Of a stretch of 64,000 bases of DNA, positions 46,808-64,000 are shown one piece after another. This DNA comes from Octopus bimaculoides (lineage: Eukaryota): contig NC_068986.1 of assembly GCF_001194135.2 (NCBI RefSeq), positions 114,580,563 through 114,644,562 on the forward strand. Reading direction: 5' to 3'. Made by a program: the position numbers and the translations under genes. The notes under the pieces were generated by a model, which saw only the letters and a list, made by a program, of their open reading frames with translations, was not told the origin of the DNA and searched no databases. Each line of letters starts with the position of its first letter. The first letter of the stretch is position 1.

Positions 46808-49562
46808 GTGGTTTTTGTATATACACACGTTTATACTTTGTGTGTGTGTGTCATTTGAGATAAACTGTGTCTAAAAGAGAAGCTATTCTGTCAATAATTT
46901 TAAGAACTGTGTAAACTTTATTTAATCTATACAGCTGACCAGGATCTGGTTAGGTAGCCAACTAACCACATTAGACTATCATTGAAACAACACCCTGAAA
47001 ATAAATTTGTGTGTGTGTATGTGTTGGCAGGGGTGCGCTGAGGCGAAGGATCATTCTCTGTTGGTATGCTGAAATCATAGCTGTGTTAAATGTACTTTTT
47101 CACAGGCACATTATGAGGCTTTCACAAATAGGTTACCTTTGTTTTACTTTATCGTTCGCTTTGTATCAACATGGTTTTTCATGTCGTTGACTGGATATTA
47201 ACAAGTAGTAGTAATATAGGCCACCTGACAGTGGTGGTCTTTGTCCGCAGCTAAGCATGTTAACATCAGTACAGTTGCTGCTTAGTCCTAGGTCAACCCA
47301 AATAAAGTAAAATACAATCGAAAGCATTCCAGCCATGACCATCCCGGCTTTTTTGCTAAGTACGGAGAACTGATATCTAATGGGGTATTTTTGAAAGACA
47401 ATAGGGTGTGATTTGAGAGAGATCGGGACTGCTATTTCTAGCAGGCCGAGGTCCTTTCGTTAGCTTACCAGTATTTATTGCATTGACCCCTCCAGGCGTG
47501 ATTTGCACTTGGAACGAAAAGGGAGGCAATTGAAACCAACCGCTATTTCGTCATCGGTCTATCATTTTCGATTCATCCTAATTATTCTTCACAGTAACTC
47601 AAGGTCACACATTTTGGTACGGCGGAACAACAATTTTAGCCATGTCTAACTTAAGCAATTAGTTAGTGATCCTCTAGTATTTGGTTACTACTTATTTTAT
47701 CGGACTTAATACTTATCGGAAGGGGTAATGAGTATCATGCGAGTCAAAAGCCAACTTTTAGTTCCCTTTCACATGTTAAGAATTTCGTTTCTGAGTCTCA
47801 ATTTGATTCCATTATGCAGCAAGTGTTTCCTGAGGGCCATTAACTTGTAAGATTGAGCAAAATTCTATAGACAACAACTGAAGCAGCTCATCTTTACTCA
47901 TGTAAATGGGTATGTCAGGTTGTGTTTCTTATATCATAGCTTAACTTAATGATTTGATATGAATAAAATATACACTGGACTGAATGTAAAACTAAAATTG
48001 GAGTTAATACAATTGACTAAAGCCCTTGAAGGTGGTGCCCCATTTTGCTACAATTTAAAAGGTGATCCGCCAATGATAAGAATTTCACCATTAGAGTTAG
48101 ATTAGTTCTCGAGAGTTAATATTTACTTCCTTATTGATAATAATTTATCTCAAGTCCTACTTATTGGGTATAAGTATATAAACTTGTGTATATGTAGGAG
48201 CACAGGAGGCATGGCTGTATGGTTCTGAGTTCAATCCTACTGCATGGCAACTTGGACAAATGCCTTTTACAAGAGTATCAGGTTGAACCAATCTTTTTAT
48301 AGAATTTGGTTACCAGAAACTTTGCAGAAGCCTGTCATGTGTACACACATGTACATGTGCACATCATATGCGTCCTCTTAAATAAAAGAATGTTCAATTG
48401 CGTTACAAAACCTGATTTTATTCAAAGATCTTGTGTTTCTGTTGGCTCTTTTTATCATACGATGACATTTGAAACCAAATCTGCTAATACTGAAAATGAC
48501 AATCTGGTACACGCACTGGATCGTTCATATACCTGACTTGATACCTACTGCAGCCCCTCTTTTTAAATTACATTTTCTTTTTTAATGCTAACTATTGAAA
48601 AACTAGTGTCCCATTTATTTGGCTGGTTGTTTAGAGCAGAGATTGGCATTAAATTATATCCTACTGTCTTTAGTAAAAGAAGAGGAATATATTGGTTAAT
48701 GATATCCTGAATAGACTTTTAGTAAAAAATGAAATGGTTTGTGAAACATCTTTGATCATAATTCAGCAGGATCAGGACTGATGGACATCTAAACAACTGA
48801 AATTTAAATATACCAACAGACAAACCTAATAATGTATATTTAGAATTACTCAAATATATTTCTTTTTAGTATTTTAATCATTATAGTATCACTCTAAGTT
48901 CTTATTTTGTCAGTCAGCTTTGTGTTTCATCCCTCTAGAATTCATAATATAAATACTAGCCAAGTACTGGAGTTAATTAAATTCACAACATTCTAACCAC
49001 CTACCCTTACAAACTATATGGCCTTGAGCCAAATTTTTTTTTTTAAATTATCTATTGGACAATTACATAACAGAACTAGTAGAGCATCAAATAATATATC
49101 TTTCTACACTTAATTTCCCCTTGTTCTGAGCACAAATCCTGAAGATCAACTTCATCTTCAAACTTCCATAATCAACTGAATAAAGTCCCAACCAAACACT
49201 AAGGTTGATCAAGACCAACATGTCTTACAAATAGTGGTAGGCTATAATTGTTAGAATACCAGACAAAATAATTTGTATTTGTTCCAGCCCTTTATGCATT
49301 GTGTCCAAATCCTGCTAAGATCTGCTTTGCCTTTCATCTCTCCATGGTTGATAAAAGTACTCTCCACAAAAAAAAATTATTGCCTTTGTGTCAAAATTAA
49401 AGGCATCATTATTGTTCTACTGAGGTCAATTTTACCTTTCATCCTTTTGGGGTCAATAAAATAAGTACCAGTTGAATACTGGGGTCGATGTAATTGACTT
49501 ATCCCCTCCCCAGAATTGCTGCTGTTGTGGCAAATTTAAAACTATTATTATCATTATTATTA

Positions 49563-49775
49563 AGGCAGCAAGCTGGCAGAATCATTAGCATGTTGGACAA
49601 AATGCTTAGTGGCATTTCACCCATTTTCATATTCTGAGTTCAAACTCTGCCAAAGTCAGCTTTACTTTTCATCCTTTCAGTTTCAATAAAATAAGTACCA
49701 CTCAAGCACTGGAATTAATGTTATTGACTTAACCCCGCCTCCAAAATTGCAGGTCAAAATTTGAAATCATTATTA
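49563..49775 (+). mobile_element. SINE family A, near full length, CpG-decayed
   Basis: ggcagcaagctggcagaatcattagcatgttggacaaaatgcttagtggcatttcacc...ctctgccaaagtcagc; positions that are CpG in the copy at 7309 read CpA or TpG. Confidence 0.85.
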
Positions 49776-49799
49776 TAATAGACTATGGATAGATTTGCT

Positions 49800-50160
49800 G
49801 ATACATTAGCATTATTAGCATACAGCTAAGCACAGCTCTCTGGCCTTGGGTCGACTTGTGCAGTGTTTTGTTTATAGTTTTATATTTTTTTATTGTATTG
49901 AAAGTCCTGCAAATAATGTCGTCGATGCCCAGTAGTGCTATTTTCTGTCTGACACCCATATTCATAAGTCCTCTGATTTTGGTTATGCATTTGTATTTTA
50001 ATCATTCTTAGGACTCATTGTTATGAAAGGATTGCTTCTATTTTCAGTCTGTAATGACATTCAAGTTATTGCTATTTCCATATCGTAATGTTTGAATATT
50101 TTCTATTTCTTAGAGAGATATGTTGTCGTGACAATTCTGGATTTTGCCTCCTTATAATGT
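49800..50160 (-). pseudogene. 3' end of an R4/Dong-like LINE
   Basis: Minus-strand ...QKIALLGIDDIICRTF, resembling the QK.ALLGTA.ILR..L C-terminus of RLE-type LINEs, then a 3' UTR-like tail. Confidence 0.6.
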
Positions 50161-61625: not shown

Positions 61626-62164
61626 ATTGAAACCTGTAAAACGAAGAATCTATTAAATACAGGACACCTAATGATTGCACAAAAATTTCAAAACAACTAG
61701 GTCTGGTCCAAACAGTTTCTCCTCAGTAACATTAGGCCCTGACCTCTCAGTTTTAAAACTTTTGTACAATTGTCAGACACCCTCCATTCAAATATATTGA
61801 GCCCCTCCTTGTGTAAATGGTCTTTTAAATGCCTGCATTAAGGTTACCTCATGTGTGTGTGTATATGTCTGAGTATACAATAAAACAACCAGGAGAAAGA
61901 AAACTCCCCAACCAAATCTCTTCTGATTTCTGGATATCCTTTTAATAGAAAAATCTAAAAGCCTGAGATTGAAATGTTTCTAGCCACATACTTGCTTTTA
62001 TCATTGGATATTTAACTAAGAATACTTAGTGACATACATGTCATACAAAAGTATGTCGCTTTCCTCCAGTTTACCCCCCCATTTTACTCTCACACAGGCA
62101 CTTCATTCTCTTCACATCCCTCCTCTTCCTTTCATTCTCCTTTTTCATTGTTTCTCTCCACTCA

Positions 62165-62440
62165 TTGTTTCTTTTTCATTCTTCTCTCTCTCCTCATTCT
62201 TCTCTCTTTCTCTCCTCATTCTTCTCTCTCTCTCTCTCCTCAGTCTTCTCTCTCTCTCTCTCCTCAGTCTTCTCTCACTCTCTCTCTCCTCAGTCTTCTC
62301 TCACTCTCTCTCTCCTCAGTCTTCTNNNNNNNNNNTCTCCTCAGTCTTCTCTCACTCTCTCTCTCCTCAGTCTTCTCTCACTCTCTCTCTCCTCAGTCTT
62401 CTCTCTCTCTCTCTCCCTCTCTCCTCATTCTTCTCCTTCC
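62165..62440. repeat. Polypyrimidine minisatellite, unit about tctctctctcctcagtcttctctcac
   Basis: Directly visible, about 24-26 nt period, contains a 10-N gap. Confidence 0.9.
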
Positions 62441-64000
62441 CTTCAGCTTTTATCCACTGCGTGTGTGTTTGTGTAGTAAATTCTTACATACAAACGTACG
62501 TAGATGTCGTACGTAGATGTCGTATTGTCTGTATGGGCATCTCATAAAATATGCATACAAAGCTGTGTGATAACATCACCATAAACACAATATCAATATT
62601 ATGTTATAAAATACACCCTCCAGAGATATCAGGAAAGTGTAATGAAATCTTGCAATATACTGATAACAATATGTTGATAACAAACCACTAAAGAAACAGG
62701 AGTTATCTGATGAAGCAGGCATGGCTGTGTAGTTAAAGTCACTCCATAGCCACATGGTTCCAGGATCAATCCTACCACATGGCTCCTTGATCAAGTTTTT
62801 TTTTTTATTATAGTGGAATTTGGCAGAGAGAACTGCGGAAGCCATATGTGTATGTGTGTGTGTTTGTGTGGTAGGGTACCAAAGTACTCTCAAAGAAACA
62901 CACTTTGATAATTAAATTCAAAAGGACTCCAAATTAAAATTAAAAATGGGATTATTTCGTAGGTATGTAGATTCCAGCAGTTTTAAAAAATACAATAACA
63001 TCAGCATAACCACTATCATAGGGTTCACTTCCATGTGGTGATGGAGAAGTGTATGTTACACACAAATTTCTGATAGAAGCCTAGATCCCTGTCCAACGGA
63101 AATATATATATAGAATATATTTATTTTCATGTCTCTTGATTTCCAAGTGCCATTCTGTTAACACTATTTTTATCTATTGTATATTGTTCTGAAATTTGAA
63201 TTCTCTCTTTTTCCTTGAGCCCTTTGTTAAACTCTTGCACAAAGAAATATTTTTGTTATATCTTCAAAATATTTTTTTATCACAGACGTATATATGTATG
63301 GGTACCTTTTGTGATGTATGTATATTGGTGAAGAAAACTGAGATGAAAACAATGCTTTTAAAATCAAGTCCTTGCTACATGTTCTGCATTAACTTACTGG
63401 TACTCCCTTGTTACTGACATCATCATACATGCAGTGAACTAGTGATTAGCACCTTGGAAACCTGCAACCAATGATGGTTTCATTCGCAGTATGAATGATA
63501 AAAATAAATAATGCAGATCCATTTTGAAGTGGAGCCAGATGTACCAGATTTACTTTGTTCTGTATTCATTACCCTTCATTAGAAAGTGTGCTTCATTGTT
63601 GAGCTGGGGGGGGGGAGTTGTCTGCCCCTGAGGATTTTTATTTATTTATTTAACTGTGCATAATATGAGTAATACACCCTGAAAAGTTATAACTACTGAA
63701 CTGGATAATGTCATTTATGTTTAGCCCCAGGTTAACTCTGAGTGGGCTGACCTATGATGATCAAAGGCATTCTGCCCAAGATCATTCTGTCTTACATCAT
63801 CCAATGTGTCCCCTTCCAATGTGATGATGGATTGTGGTTTAAGGGGGATTTAGTTGTTATTTCTAACAAGTAATTCTTAAAAAATTGTTTTAACATGTTT
63901 AATGAAGTCACAATAAAAAGGGTTTAATTAGAAAATATTACATAAGAAACTTCTAATATTGTTCAGCTCAGCAAACATGGGAAGACAACTGCAGACATGT

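What the first reader, a model, noticed from the sequence alone, without database searches (positions are those of the whole stretch)
47600..64000. Abrupt CpG-depletion boundary inside the long Musashi intron
Seen: about 47 CpG in 43981-45480 against 7 in 51001-52500 (hand counts). The family D copy at 47270-47460 keeps its CpGs, whereas family A and B copies from 48200 onward (49563, 61265) show systematic CpG to TpG/CpA change. There is no N-gap between 41086 and 60077, so this is not a scaffold join. Established: molluscs have mosaic gene-body methylation, and germline 5mC erodes CpG. Inference: a stable germline-methylated domain begins at about 47.7 kb within one intron. That could mean an internal promoter whose transcript skips RRM1, a nested or antisense gene ending or starting here, or a chromatin boundary within the gene.
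Basis: partly seen in the sequence, partly recalled or inferred. Interest (0 to 1): 0.75.

Follow-up and report, generated by a model that had tools for sequence, protein, structure and literature searches.

The report
Germline-methylation edge inside octopus Musashi gene
The sharp loss of CpG at 47.8 kb is real and marks the start of a roughly 197-kb stretch of the octopus Musashi gene that has evidently been methylated in the germline for a long time, but genes with an unmethylated front part and a methylated back part are already a described class in this species, so it is a clean example and not a new phenomenon.

Summary
CpG o/e falls from 0.76 (1-47,790) to 0.19. The maximum-likelihood changepoint is 47,791 (support 47,736-47,878), and the likelihood gain of 168 exceeds all 1,000 block shuffles (maximum 58).

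The boundary lies 11.9 kb into the 65-kb intron between the last RRM1 exon (35,874-35,915) and the first RRM2 exon (100,850, beyond the window). It is 120.7 kb downstream of exon 1.

With 200 kb of downstream sequence added, the depleted domain runs 197 kb to 245,042, which is 34 kb past the stop codon. A 7.9-kb CpG-normal island (91.3-99.2 kb) interrupts it.

The depletion is CpG-to-TpG/CpA decay:
- The CpG deficit (2,955) matches the TpG+CpA surplus (3,348).
- Repeat copies keep 76% of ancestral CpGs on the left and 40% inside, at equal non-CpG divergence.

This matches the published "MP 3" class of O. bimaculoides genes (5' third unmethylated, 3' part and TTS methylated).

The cause of the edge is unresolved. 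RefSeq annotates an RRM1-less isoform, but where its 5' exon lies is unknown. The island holds an unannotated, conserved 265-aa nested gene.

Methylation itself was not measured here; public WGBS data would settle it.

The parts
1..47790 (.). CpG-normal (unmethylated-type) compartment holding Musashi exons 2-4. CpG o/e 0.76, TG and CA o/e 1.2.
   Evidence: Exon 1, 72.9 kb further upstream, is also undepleted (o/e 0.81).
12296..12377 (+). Musashi exon 2 (RRM1: [28 protein letters not shown])
29354..29438 (+). Musashi exon 3 (RRM1: [28 protein letters not shown])
35874..35915 (+). Musashi exon 4 (end of RRM1: VDPKVAFPRKAQPK). The 64.9-kb intron that contains the boundary starts at 35,916 and ends at 100,849, outside the window.
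47736..47878 (.). Support interval of the CpG-depletion changepoint (best estimate 47,791). Single-copy sequence with no tRNA or Rfam element.
47791..64000 (.). First 16.2 kb of the CpG-depleted (germline-methylated-type) domain. It continues to 245,042 in extended coordinates. CpG o/e 0.19, TG/CA o/e 1.34-1.41.
49417..49753 (.). Old interspersed-repeat copy (non-CpG divergence 0.11) with 1 of 13 ancestral CpGs kept and 10 turned into TG/CA.
60342..60623 (.). Very young 282-bp SINE copy with 11 of 11 CpGs kept, 99% identical to at least 39 copies elsewhere. It causes the CpG-rich blip at 60-61 kb.
60078..60315 (.). Assembly gap (238 N), intronic. Both flanks are depleted. Continuity cannot be shown.
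62183..62419 (.). 26-bp-unit tandem array that spans the 10-N gap at 62,326-62,335, so the gap is internal to one array.

Best explanation
The step at 47.8 kb is the 5' edge of a roughly 197-kb domain that has been CpG-methylated in the germline for a long time. The domain covers the 3' 58% of the Musashi transcription unit (from mid-intron 4 to the stop codon at 210,908) plus about 34 kb downstream. The 5' 120 kb of the gene (exon 1 to exon 4 and the first 12 kb of intron 4) has stayed unmethylated. Methylated cytosines deaminate to thymine, so CpG has eroded to TpG/CpA inside the domain and not outside it.

This makes Musashi a gene of the published octopus 'MP 3' type, with the first third unmethylated and the 3' part and TTS region methylated.

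Mechanism (inferred, not shown). De novo methylation in germ cells follows marks laid down by transcription elongation and is kept away from promoter-type or repressed chromatin. I think the most likely cause of so discrete an edge in mid-intron is that the transcription unit active in germ cells starts near 47.8 kb. That would be an internal start whose product would lack RRM1, like the annotated isoform X3. I put that sub-claim at about 0.4. An edge of a protected 5' regulatory chromatin domain is nearly as likely.

The 7.9-kb CpG-normal hole at 91.3-99.2 kb is a protected promoter or gene region belonging to a nested gene.
For: Shown:
- A step in CpG o/e from 0.76 to 0.19 with GpC unchanged.
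- The same values in sequence unique within the 264 kb.
- A CpG deficit of 2,955 against a TG+CA surplus of 3,348.
- Ancestral CpGs in repeats kept 48/63 on the left against 112/277 inside (Fisher p = 3e-7), with non-CpG divergence 6.7% against 8.0%.
- Copy-level medians of 0.80 against 0.33 (p = 5e-4) at equal divergence (0.079 against 0.077). Retention inside the domain falls with copy age. The odds ratio is about 0.17 after controlling for divergence.
- A domain bounded at 47,791 and 245,042 with return to o/e 0.76 beyond it.
- Musashi exons in the correct order on both sides, with exon 1 72.9 kb upstream and undepleted.

Literature:
- The MP 3 class, and the same patterns in brain and hatchling (PMC9476566).
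- Germline de novo methylation follows transcription-associated marks and avoids repressive marks in a cnidarian (PMC13345969).
- Mouse oocyte methylated domains coincide with transcription units, many from unannotated start sites, and H3K4me protects promoters (PMC5066131).

For the internal-start sub-claim:
- RefSeq isoform X3 (XP_014774412.1) begins exactly at the ATG that opens the exon at 100,850.
- Segment R1 (47.8-91.3 kb) is depleted at least as strongly as the rest of the domain (0.19 against 0.26).
Against: - No methylation, transcript-start or chromatin data were available.
- The boundary shows no recognisable promoter, exon, RNA gene or repeat.
- Isoform X3 could also arise from exon 1 by skipping exons 2-4. 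The frameshift would leave the exon-5 ATG as the start of the longest ORF, so X3 does not prove an internal start.
- A ramp of up to about 4 kb cannot be excluded.
- The 72 kb between exon 1 and the window start could not be read.
- Depletion continues 34 kb past the stop codon, which a simple 'gene body' account explains only by appeal to the published observation that methylation extends beyond the TTS.
Confidence: 0.8

Rival explanations
1. The edge is a chromatin-domain boundary without any transcript start. Full-length Musashi is transcribed from exon 1 in germ cells, but a large 5' regulatory domain (promoter-proximal H3K4-methylated, H2A.Z or Polycomb-type chromatin) excludes the de novo methyltransferase for 120 kb. 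Methylation begins where that domain ends.
For: The 7.9-kb hole at 91.3-99.2 kb shows that DNA inside a methylated, presumably transcribed, unit can be protected. Its left edge is at the same place in another octopod. MP 3 is a large class of 6,545 transcripts, which suggests a general rule and not thousands of hidden promoters. Repressive marks oppose re-methylation in Nematostella, and H3K4me blocks methylation. All annotated full-length isoforms start at exon 1.
Against: 120 kb is very long for promoter-type protection. Polycomb-type repression of the 5' part would itself imply that germline transcripts start further downstream. No sequence feature marks the edge.
Confidence: 0.3
2. The left 43 kb of the depleted domain (47.8-91.3 kb) is a separate, unannotated transcription unit, such as a long non-coding or antisense RNA. 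It would start or end at 47.8 kb and abut the CpG-normal island. The Musashi-related methylation proper would begin only at 99.2 kb, 1.6 kb upstream of the RRM2 exon.
For: The island splits the domain into two blocks with step-like edges at 91,337 and 99,242. The right block begins just upstream of the exon whose first codon is the start codon of isoform X3. In mouse oocytes many methylated domains come from unannotated transcription units.
Against: There is no ORF with a family match and no annotated gene in this interval. Three octopod annotations list nothing inside the Musashi range. Strand-skew statistics show no change of direction. Depletion is the same on both sides of the island.
Confidence: 0.12
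3. The step has nothing to do with methylation. It would reflect a difference in repeat age or composition, or a chimeric assembly joining two unrelated regions.
For: The assembly is gap-rich, and CpG-rich young SINEs do create local blips.
Against: Unique sequence shows the same step. Repeat copies of equal non-CpG divergence differ in CpG retention. The deficit is balanced by TG/CA. The changepoint lies in single-copy, N-free sequence. Musashi exons are in the right order and orientation on both sides, and the gene span agrees with O. sinensis: 214 kb there against about 199 kb from exon 2 to the stop codon here.
Confidence: 0.03

Closest known systems
Mosaic gene-body methylation of invertebrates and its CpG-depletion footprint (Tweedie/Bird; Suzuki 2007 in Ciona; oyster and Nautilus methylomes). 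The first three are cited from my own knowledge; Nautilus is PMC12532940.
   Same: Long methylated blocks over transcription units alternate with unmethylated DNA. Low CpG o/e with a TpG/CpA excess is the evolutionary trace. Promoters and first exons are unmethylated.
   Different: The unmethylated 5' part here is not a promoter plus first exon. It is 120 kb containing four exons, and the onset falls in mid-intron, 12 kb from the nearest exon.
'MP 3' methylation pattern of O. bimaculoides transcripts (Macchi, Edsinger & Sadler 2022, PMC9476566)
   Same: Same species. [quoted passage not shown] The pattern is identical across tissues, which fits a germline-stable state. Here the onset is at 42% of the ATG-to-stop span, and depletion runs 34 kb past the stop codon.
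   Different: MP 3 was defined from averaged 30-bin metaprofiles. Single-locus edge sharpness, holes within the domain, and the cause of the late onset were not described. I could not confirm the class assigned to Musashi because the table is held in truncated form with no identifier mapping.
Transcription-defined hypermethylated domains of the mouse oocyte (reviewed in PMC5066131)
   Same: The methylome is bimodal. Methylated blocks coincide with germ-cell transcription units that often start at unannotated or alternative promoters. Intragenic H3K4me-marked islands can stay unmethylated.
   Different: This is a mammalian system, in which the oocyte pattern is later overwritten genome-wide. 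The resemblance concerns how it works and is not a shared family. No germ-cell transcript map exists here.
Unmethylated intragenic CpG islands at alternative or nested promoters
   Same: The 91.3-99.2 kb island has CpG o/e 0.94 with no TpG/CpA excess. A conserved CCAAT/TATA-like block sits at its edge, followed by a conserved ORF. Old repeats inside it keep their CpGs.
   Different: At 7.9 kb and 35.5% GC it is not GC-rich, and it is much longer than a typical promoter island. It seems to cover the nested gene and several kb beyond.

Membership tests
Germline-methylated (gene-body-type) domain inferred from CpG decay | CpG o/e strongly reduced relative to flanks after correction for base composition, with GpC unaffected | tested here: met
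   CpG o/e is 0.19-0.26 inside and 0.76 in both flanks. GpC o/e is 0.92-1.00 against 0.94.
Germline-methylated (gene-body-type) domain inferred from CpG decay | Missing CpG reappears as TpG and CpA | tested here: met
   The deficit is 2,955 and the TG+CA surplus is 3,348. For segment R1 the figures are 797 and 812.
Germline-methylated (gene-body-type) domain inferred from CpG decay | Repeat copies inside lose CpG faster than copies outside at equal non-CpG divergence | tested here: met
   40% of ancestral CpGs are kept inside and 76% outside (p = 3e-7). Copy-level medians are 0.33 and 0.80 (p = 5e-4). Divergence medians are 0.077 and 0.079.
Germline-methylated (gene-body-type) domain inferred from CpG decay | Direct evidence of 5mC at the remaining CpGs in germ cells or tissues | not testable with these tools
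   Public WGBS exists (GSE141609, cited in PMC9476566) but cannot be read here.
Germline-methylated (gene-body-type) domain inferred from CpG decay | Coincides with a transcription unit | tested here: inconclusive
   The domain covers the 3' 58% of Musashi plus 34 kb downstream, but not the 5' 120 kb. Expression was not tested.
MP 3 class of Macchi et al. 2022 | [quoted passage not shown] | tested here: met
   By the CpG proxy only. Exon 1 has o/e 0.81 and 1-47,790 has 0.76. The onset is at 120.7 kb of the 283.9-kb ATG-to-stop span, which is 42%. The 72 kb between exon 1 and the window was not read.
MP 3 class of Macchi et al. 2022 | 3' part and region around the TTS methylated | tested here: met
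   By the CpG proxy. o/e is 0.26 to the stop codon and 0.23 for the following 34 kb.
MP 3 class of Macchi et al. 2022 | Listed as MP 3 in the paper's Table S7 | not testable with these tools
   The table is held in truncated form. No 'Musashi/MSI' string occurs in the supplements, and no identifier mapping is available.
Methylated domain that starts at a germ-cell (alternative) transcription start site | A transcript 5' end maps to the domain edge | not testable with these tools
   No CAGE or RNA data are available. The genomic range of isoform X3 is not on record.
Methylated domain that starts at a germ-cell (alternative) transcription start site | An isoform lacking the upstream exons exists | tested here: met
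   XP_014774412.1 (227 aa) starts at MVTRTKK, the first codon of the exon at 100,850. It is a computational RefSeq model and is also compatible with exon skipping.
Methylated domain that starts at a germ-cell (alternative) transcription start site | Promoter-like or conserved sequence at the edge | tested here: inconclusive
   Nothing recognisable lies at 47.6-48.0 kb. No orthologous sequence was available to judge conservation.

The most novel reading that the evidence does not exclude
The edge marks a germ-cell-specific internal promoter of Musashi. In the germline only an RRM1-less protein (isoform X3 type) would be made, while the 5' 120 kb with the RRM1 exons would be a soma- or neural-only, methylation-free regulatory block. 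CpG-decay edges could then be used to map germline transcription starts across cephalopod genomes, and the 'MP 3' class would largely be genes with hidden germline promoters.
Probability: 0.3. Interest if true: 0.55.

Novelty: new member of a known kind. Interest (0 to 1): 0.3.

Why it matters
This is a clean single-locus illustration that sequence alone can delimit long-term germline methylation domains in a cephalopod to within a few hundred bases to a few kb. It also shows that such domains can start deep inside a gene and contain protected holes.

It gives a concrete test case for what sets the late onset of gene-body methylation in the published MP 3 class: a hidden germline promoter or a protected 5' chromatin domain. 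The case comes with named coordinates and public WGBS data to check.

The unannotated nested gene is a small annotation gain.

Tried and rejected
Only 3 kb around exon 1 was obtained.
- Sampling SINE-flanking loci genome-wide to get the background CpG o/e distribution failed because the loci could not be cut out.
- The orthologous Musashi loci of O. sinensis, O. vulgaris and Argonauta hians gave gene ranges only.
- The genomic range of isoform X3 and any contig encoding the nested ORF in this species are not on record.
- The per-gene methylation class of Musashi could not be found in the Macchi supplements.
- No paper cites the Logan runs SRR11869384-91, so their species and library type are unknown. 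The contigs extend about 0.9 kb upstream of the putative promoter, which suggests genomic DNA.
- Rfam and tRNA scans of the window and boundary found nothing.
- GC, AT and TG-CA strand skews by segment were too small to indicate transcription direction.
- The 97.0-98.2 kb CpG cluster was considered as a promoter island. It is made of old interspersed repeats that have simply kept their CpGs.
- The O. vulgaris 'next gene' 4.8 kb after isoform X2 was considered as a separate downstream gene. It most likely represents the remaining Musashi 3' exons.

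
Full report
**Where the window lies.** The window is G000:C6:114,580,563-114,644,562 of a 2.34-Gb genome. The proteins it encodes are 100% identical to Octopus Musashi homolog 2 records, including O. bimaculoides XP_014774411.1. I added 200 kb of downstream sequence. Coordinates above 64,000 continue the window numbering ("extended coordinates").

**The observation.**
- Per-kb CpG o/e is mostly 0.5-1.1 up to 48 kb and 0.06-0.27 afterwards. GpC o/e does not change.
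- A Bernoulli changepoint model on "C followed by G" puts the break at 47,791, with 2-lnL support 47,736-47,878. P(G|C) is 0.142 on the left and 0.031 on the right.
- The log-likelihood gain is 168.5. In 1,000 shuffles of roughly 1-kb blocks the mean was 14.7 and the maximum 58.1.
- A pure step fits best, but linear ramps up to about 4 kb wide are within 2 lnL. CpG density limits how sharp the edge can be called.
- There is no N run between 41,086 and 60,077. The DNA at the changepoint is single-copy in the genome.

**The two gaps flagged by the scan's program.** The 10-N gap at 62,326-62,335 lies inside one 26-bp-unit tandem array (62,183-62,419), so the two sides are continuous. The 238-N gap at 60,078-60,315 has (TA)n on its left and a complete 282-bp SINE starting 27 bp to its right. 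Continuity cannot be shown. Both gaps are intronic, so no reading frame is at stake. Both are at least 12 kb from the boundary and have equally depleted DNA on each side.

**Gene structure.** Musashi lies on the + strand.

| Exon | Position (extended coordinates) | Content |
|---|---|---|
| 1 | C6:114,507,610-678, 72.9 kb upstream of the window | MKMDSQTPQ…KMFIGGLSWQTT |
| 2 | 12,296-12,377 | RRM1 |
| 3 | 29,354-29,438 | RRM1 |
| 4 | 35,874-35,915 | end of RRM1 |
| 5 | 100,850-100,942 | start of RRM2 |
| later exons | about 110.2, 131.4, 135.1, 143.5, 150.5, 184.6, 209.6 and 210.9 kb | RRM2 and C-terminal part |
| stop codon | 210,908-210,910 | |

It is 120.7 kb downstream of the start codon, which is 42% of the 283.9-kb ATG-to-stop span. 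The 3 kb around exon 1 is undepleted, with o/e 0.81.

**Extent of the domain.**

| Segment (extended coordinates) | CpG o/e |
|---|---|
| 1-47,790 | 0.76 |
| 47,791-91,336 | 0.19 |
| 91,337-99,242 (island) | 0.94 |
| 99,243-211,000 | 0.26 |
| 211,001-245,042 | 0.23 |
| 245,043-264,000 | 0.76 |

The right edge is at 245,042 (support 244,716-245,226; lnL gain 149). The island edges are at 91,337 and 99,242. The values are the same in sequence that is unique within the 264 kb. So the window shows the left end of a 197-kb depleted domain. The domain continues 34 kb past the stop codon and contains one 7.9-kb hole.

**Is it methylation-type decay?** Three tests say yes.
1. The TG and CA o/e rise from 1.21 to 1.34-1.45 inside the domain, and are only 1.03-1.07 in the island. 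The CpG deficit relative to the flank level is 2,955 sites and the TG+CA surplus is 3,348. For the first segment alone the figures are 797 and 812.
2. I used pile-ups of all interspersed-repeat copies in the 264 kb to call ancestral CpG sites. Copies left of the edge keep 48 of 63 (76%) and have lost 12 to TG/CA. Copies inside keep 112 of 277 (40%) and have lost 143 (Fisher p = 3e-7). Non-CpG divergence is 6.7% against 8.0% (p = 0.08). The result holds for five threshold settings.
3. Per copy, median retention is 0.80 (9 copies outside) against 0.33 (36 copies inside), p = 5e-4. Median non-CpG divergence is 0.079 against 0.077.
   - Inside the domain, retention falls with age. Copies at 2-3% divergence keep 8-11 of 10-11 CpGs, and copies at 10% or more keep 0-1.
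   - Outside the domain, copies at 10-12% divergence still keep 4-6 of 6-7.
   - A logistic fit gives log-odds -1.76 for being inside, after controlling for divergence.

The small CpG-rich blips inside the domain are mostly such young SINEs. The one at 60,342-60,623 is 99% identical to at least 39 other copies.

**What is known.** Macchi, Edsinger and Sadler (BMC Biol 2022, PMC9476566) analysed O. bimaculoides brain WGBS and hatchling RRBS.
- Fewer than 10% of CpGs are methylated. They cluster on gene bodies and are largely absent from transposons.
- k-means clustering gave four gene patterns. [quoted passage not shown] - The patterns are the same in all samples.

The Musashi profile inferred here fits MP 3. 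I could not confirm its listed class. Nautilus shows the usual unmethylated promoter and first exon (PMC12532940).

On mechanism, in Nematostella the germline re-establishes methylation at actively transcribed loci. Transcription-associated histone marks predict recovery, and repressive marks oppose it (PMC13345969). In mouse oocytes, methylated domains coincide with transcription units, many from unannotated or alternative starts, and H3K4 methylation protects promoters (PMC5066131).

**What sets the edge?** Nothing recognisable lies at 47.6-48.0 kb. There is no repeat, ORF with a family match, tRNA or Rfam family.

RefSeq annotates O. bimaculoides isoform X3 (XP_014774412.1, 227 aa), whose first residues, MVTRTKK, are the first codons of the exon at 100,850. 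Its first exon could not be located. The same protein would also be predicted for a transcript from exon 1 that skips exons 2-4, because the join is out of frame. That last point is my inference from the exon phases. The other annotated isoforms start at exon 1.

The O. sinensis, O. vulgaris and Argonauta annotations call no other gene inside the Musashi range.

My ranking of the three possible causes:
1. An internal germ-cell transcript start near 47.8 kb, about 0.4. A discrete mid-intron edge is hard to explain by gradual build-up of elongation marks, and the segment next to it is as depleted as the rest.
2. The edge of a protected 5' chromatin domain, about 0.3.
3. A separate unannotated transcription unit over 47.8-91.3 kb, about 0.12.

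A non-methylation or assembly cause is about 0.03.

**The hole and a nested gene (outside the window).**
- At the left edge of the island there is a 288-codon open frame on the + strand. The ATG is at 91,564 and the stop codon (TGA) at 92,359-92,361, giving 265 aa. The product is proline-rich and has no Pfam match. It is single-copy in the genome.
- Its only relative among 1.8 billion representatives and 5.8 billion clustered proteins is a 260-aa ORF on Logan contigs from runs SRR11869384-91.
- Those contigs are collinear and unspliced with 90.6-95.4 kb at 78-90% identity. Between the two ORFs dS is 0.22 and dN/dS is 0.36. All five indels are single codons, and the start and stop are conserved. 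This indicates a real, lineage-restricted protein-coding gene that no annotation in the collection carries.
- A block at 90,981-91,345 is 91-96% identical between species, against about 78-84% around it. It carries GACCAATAG at 91,234 and TTATATTTTT at 91,281, about 280 bp before the ATG and exactly at the island's left edge. This is a plausible core promoter, though that reading is inferred.
- The other species' contig is also CpG-normal from the ORF onwards (o/e 0.86 overall) and depleted just upstream of it. The edge of the hole is therefore conserved.
- The strongest CpG cluster in the island (97.0-98.2 kb) consists of old repeats that have kept their CpGs.

**Verdict.** The inference of a long-standing germline-methylated domain starting at 47.8 kb is well supported by sequence evidence, but it is an instance of a pattern already described for thousands of genes in this species. 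The cause of the edge is open and can be tested directly with existing public data.

Noticed in passing
L003:7564-8361 (extended coordinates 91,564-92,361; G000:C6:114,672,126-114,672,923), + strand, outside the window: Unannotated single-exon ORF of 265 aa nested in Musashi intron 4. It is single-copy and proline-rich and has no Pfam match. Its only relative is a 260-aa ORF in another octopod's contigs. dN/dS is 0.36, all indels are in frame, and the start and stop are conserved.
   Followed up: yes
L003:6981-7345 (extended 90,981-91,345): A block 91-96% identical between the two octopods, with a CCAAT box (91,234) and a TATA-like motif (91,281). It lies exactly at the left edge of the CpG-normal island and about 280 bp before the nested ORF's ATG, so it is a candidate core promoter.
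   Followed up: partly
L003:7337 to L004:5242 (extended 91,337-99,242): A 7.9-kb CpG-normal hole (o/e 0.94, no TpG/CpA excess) inside the depleted domain. It ends 1.6 kb upstream of the first RRM2 exon. The orthologous stretch in the other species (L021) is CpG-normal too, with the same left edge.
   Followed up: yes
window 60,342-60,623: A 282-bp SINE copy that is 99% identical to at least 39 full-length copies on many chromosomes. The family has therefore been active very recently.
   Followed up: partly
L013:647-1321 (extended 184,647-185,321): The Musashi exon beginning GFSSFGYLPTP runs into a 642-N assembly gap (184,680-185,321). About 60 codons present in the O. sinensis protein (roughly residues 217-276) have no counterpart in the assembled sequence.
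   Followed up: partly
P0005 / P0123 records (O. sinensis GCA_006345805.1, O. vulgaris GCA_951406725.2): The O. sinensis RefSeq Musashi model starts at MVMKDP inside exon 2, so it lacks exon 1. In O. vulgaris a 201-aa + strand 'gene' is called 4.8 kb after the end of the 261-aa isoform, and it probably represents the remaining Musashi 3' exons.
   Followed up: partly
L016 to L019:1042 (extended 210,911-245,042): CpG depletion (o/e 0.23) continues 34 kb beyond the Musashi stop codon, with no recognisable gene there. This is longer than a plausible 3' UTR, given that the O. sinensis gene range is only about 16 kb longer than the exon 2-to-stop span here.
   Followed up: partly
window 17,474-17,998 (-), 5,725-6,048 (-), 25,227-25,760 (+): Transposon relics in the unmethylated part: a Tc1/mariner-type DDE_3 fragment, a CENP-B_N (pogo-type) fragment, and a zf-RVT fragment that scores below Pfam's cut-off.
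   Followed up: partly
L009:6532-6666 (extended 150,532-150,666) and L011:8678 (extended 172,678): Two alternative 3' ends of Musashi. One is a read-through of the exon at 150.5 kb (…GMEQLQLACWYPEAPLGF), shared with transcripts of more distant cephalopods (P0001, P0002). The other is the terminal exon DFQFIS* of isoform X2.
   Followed up: no
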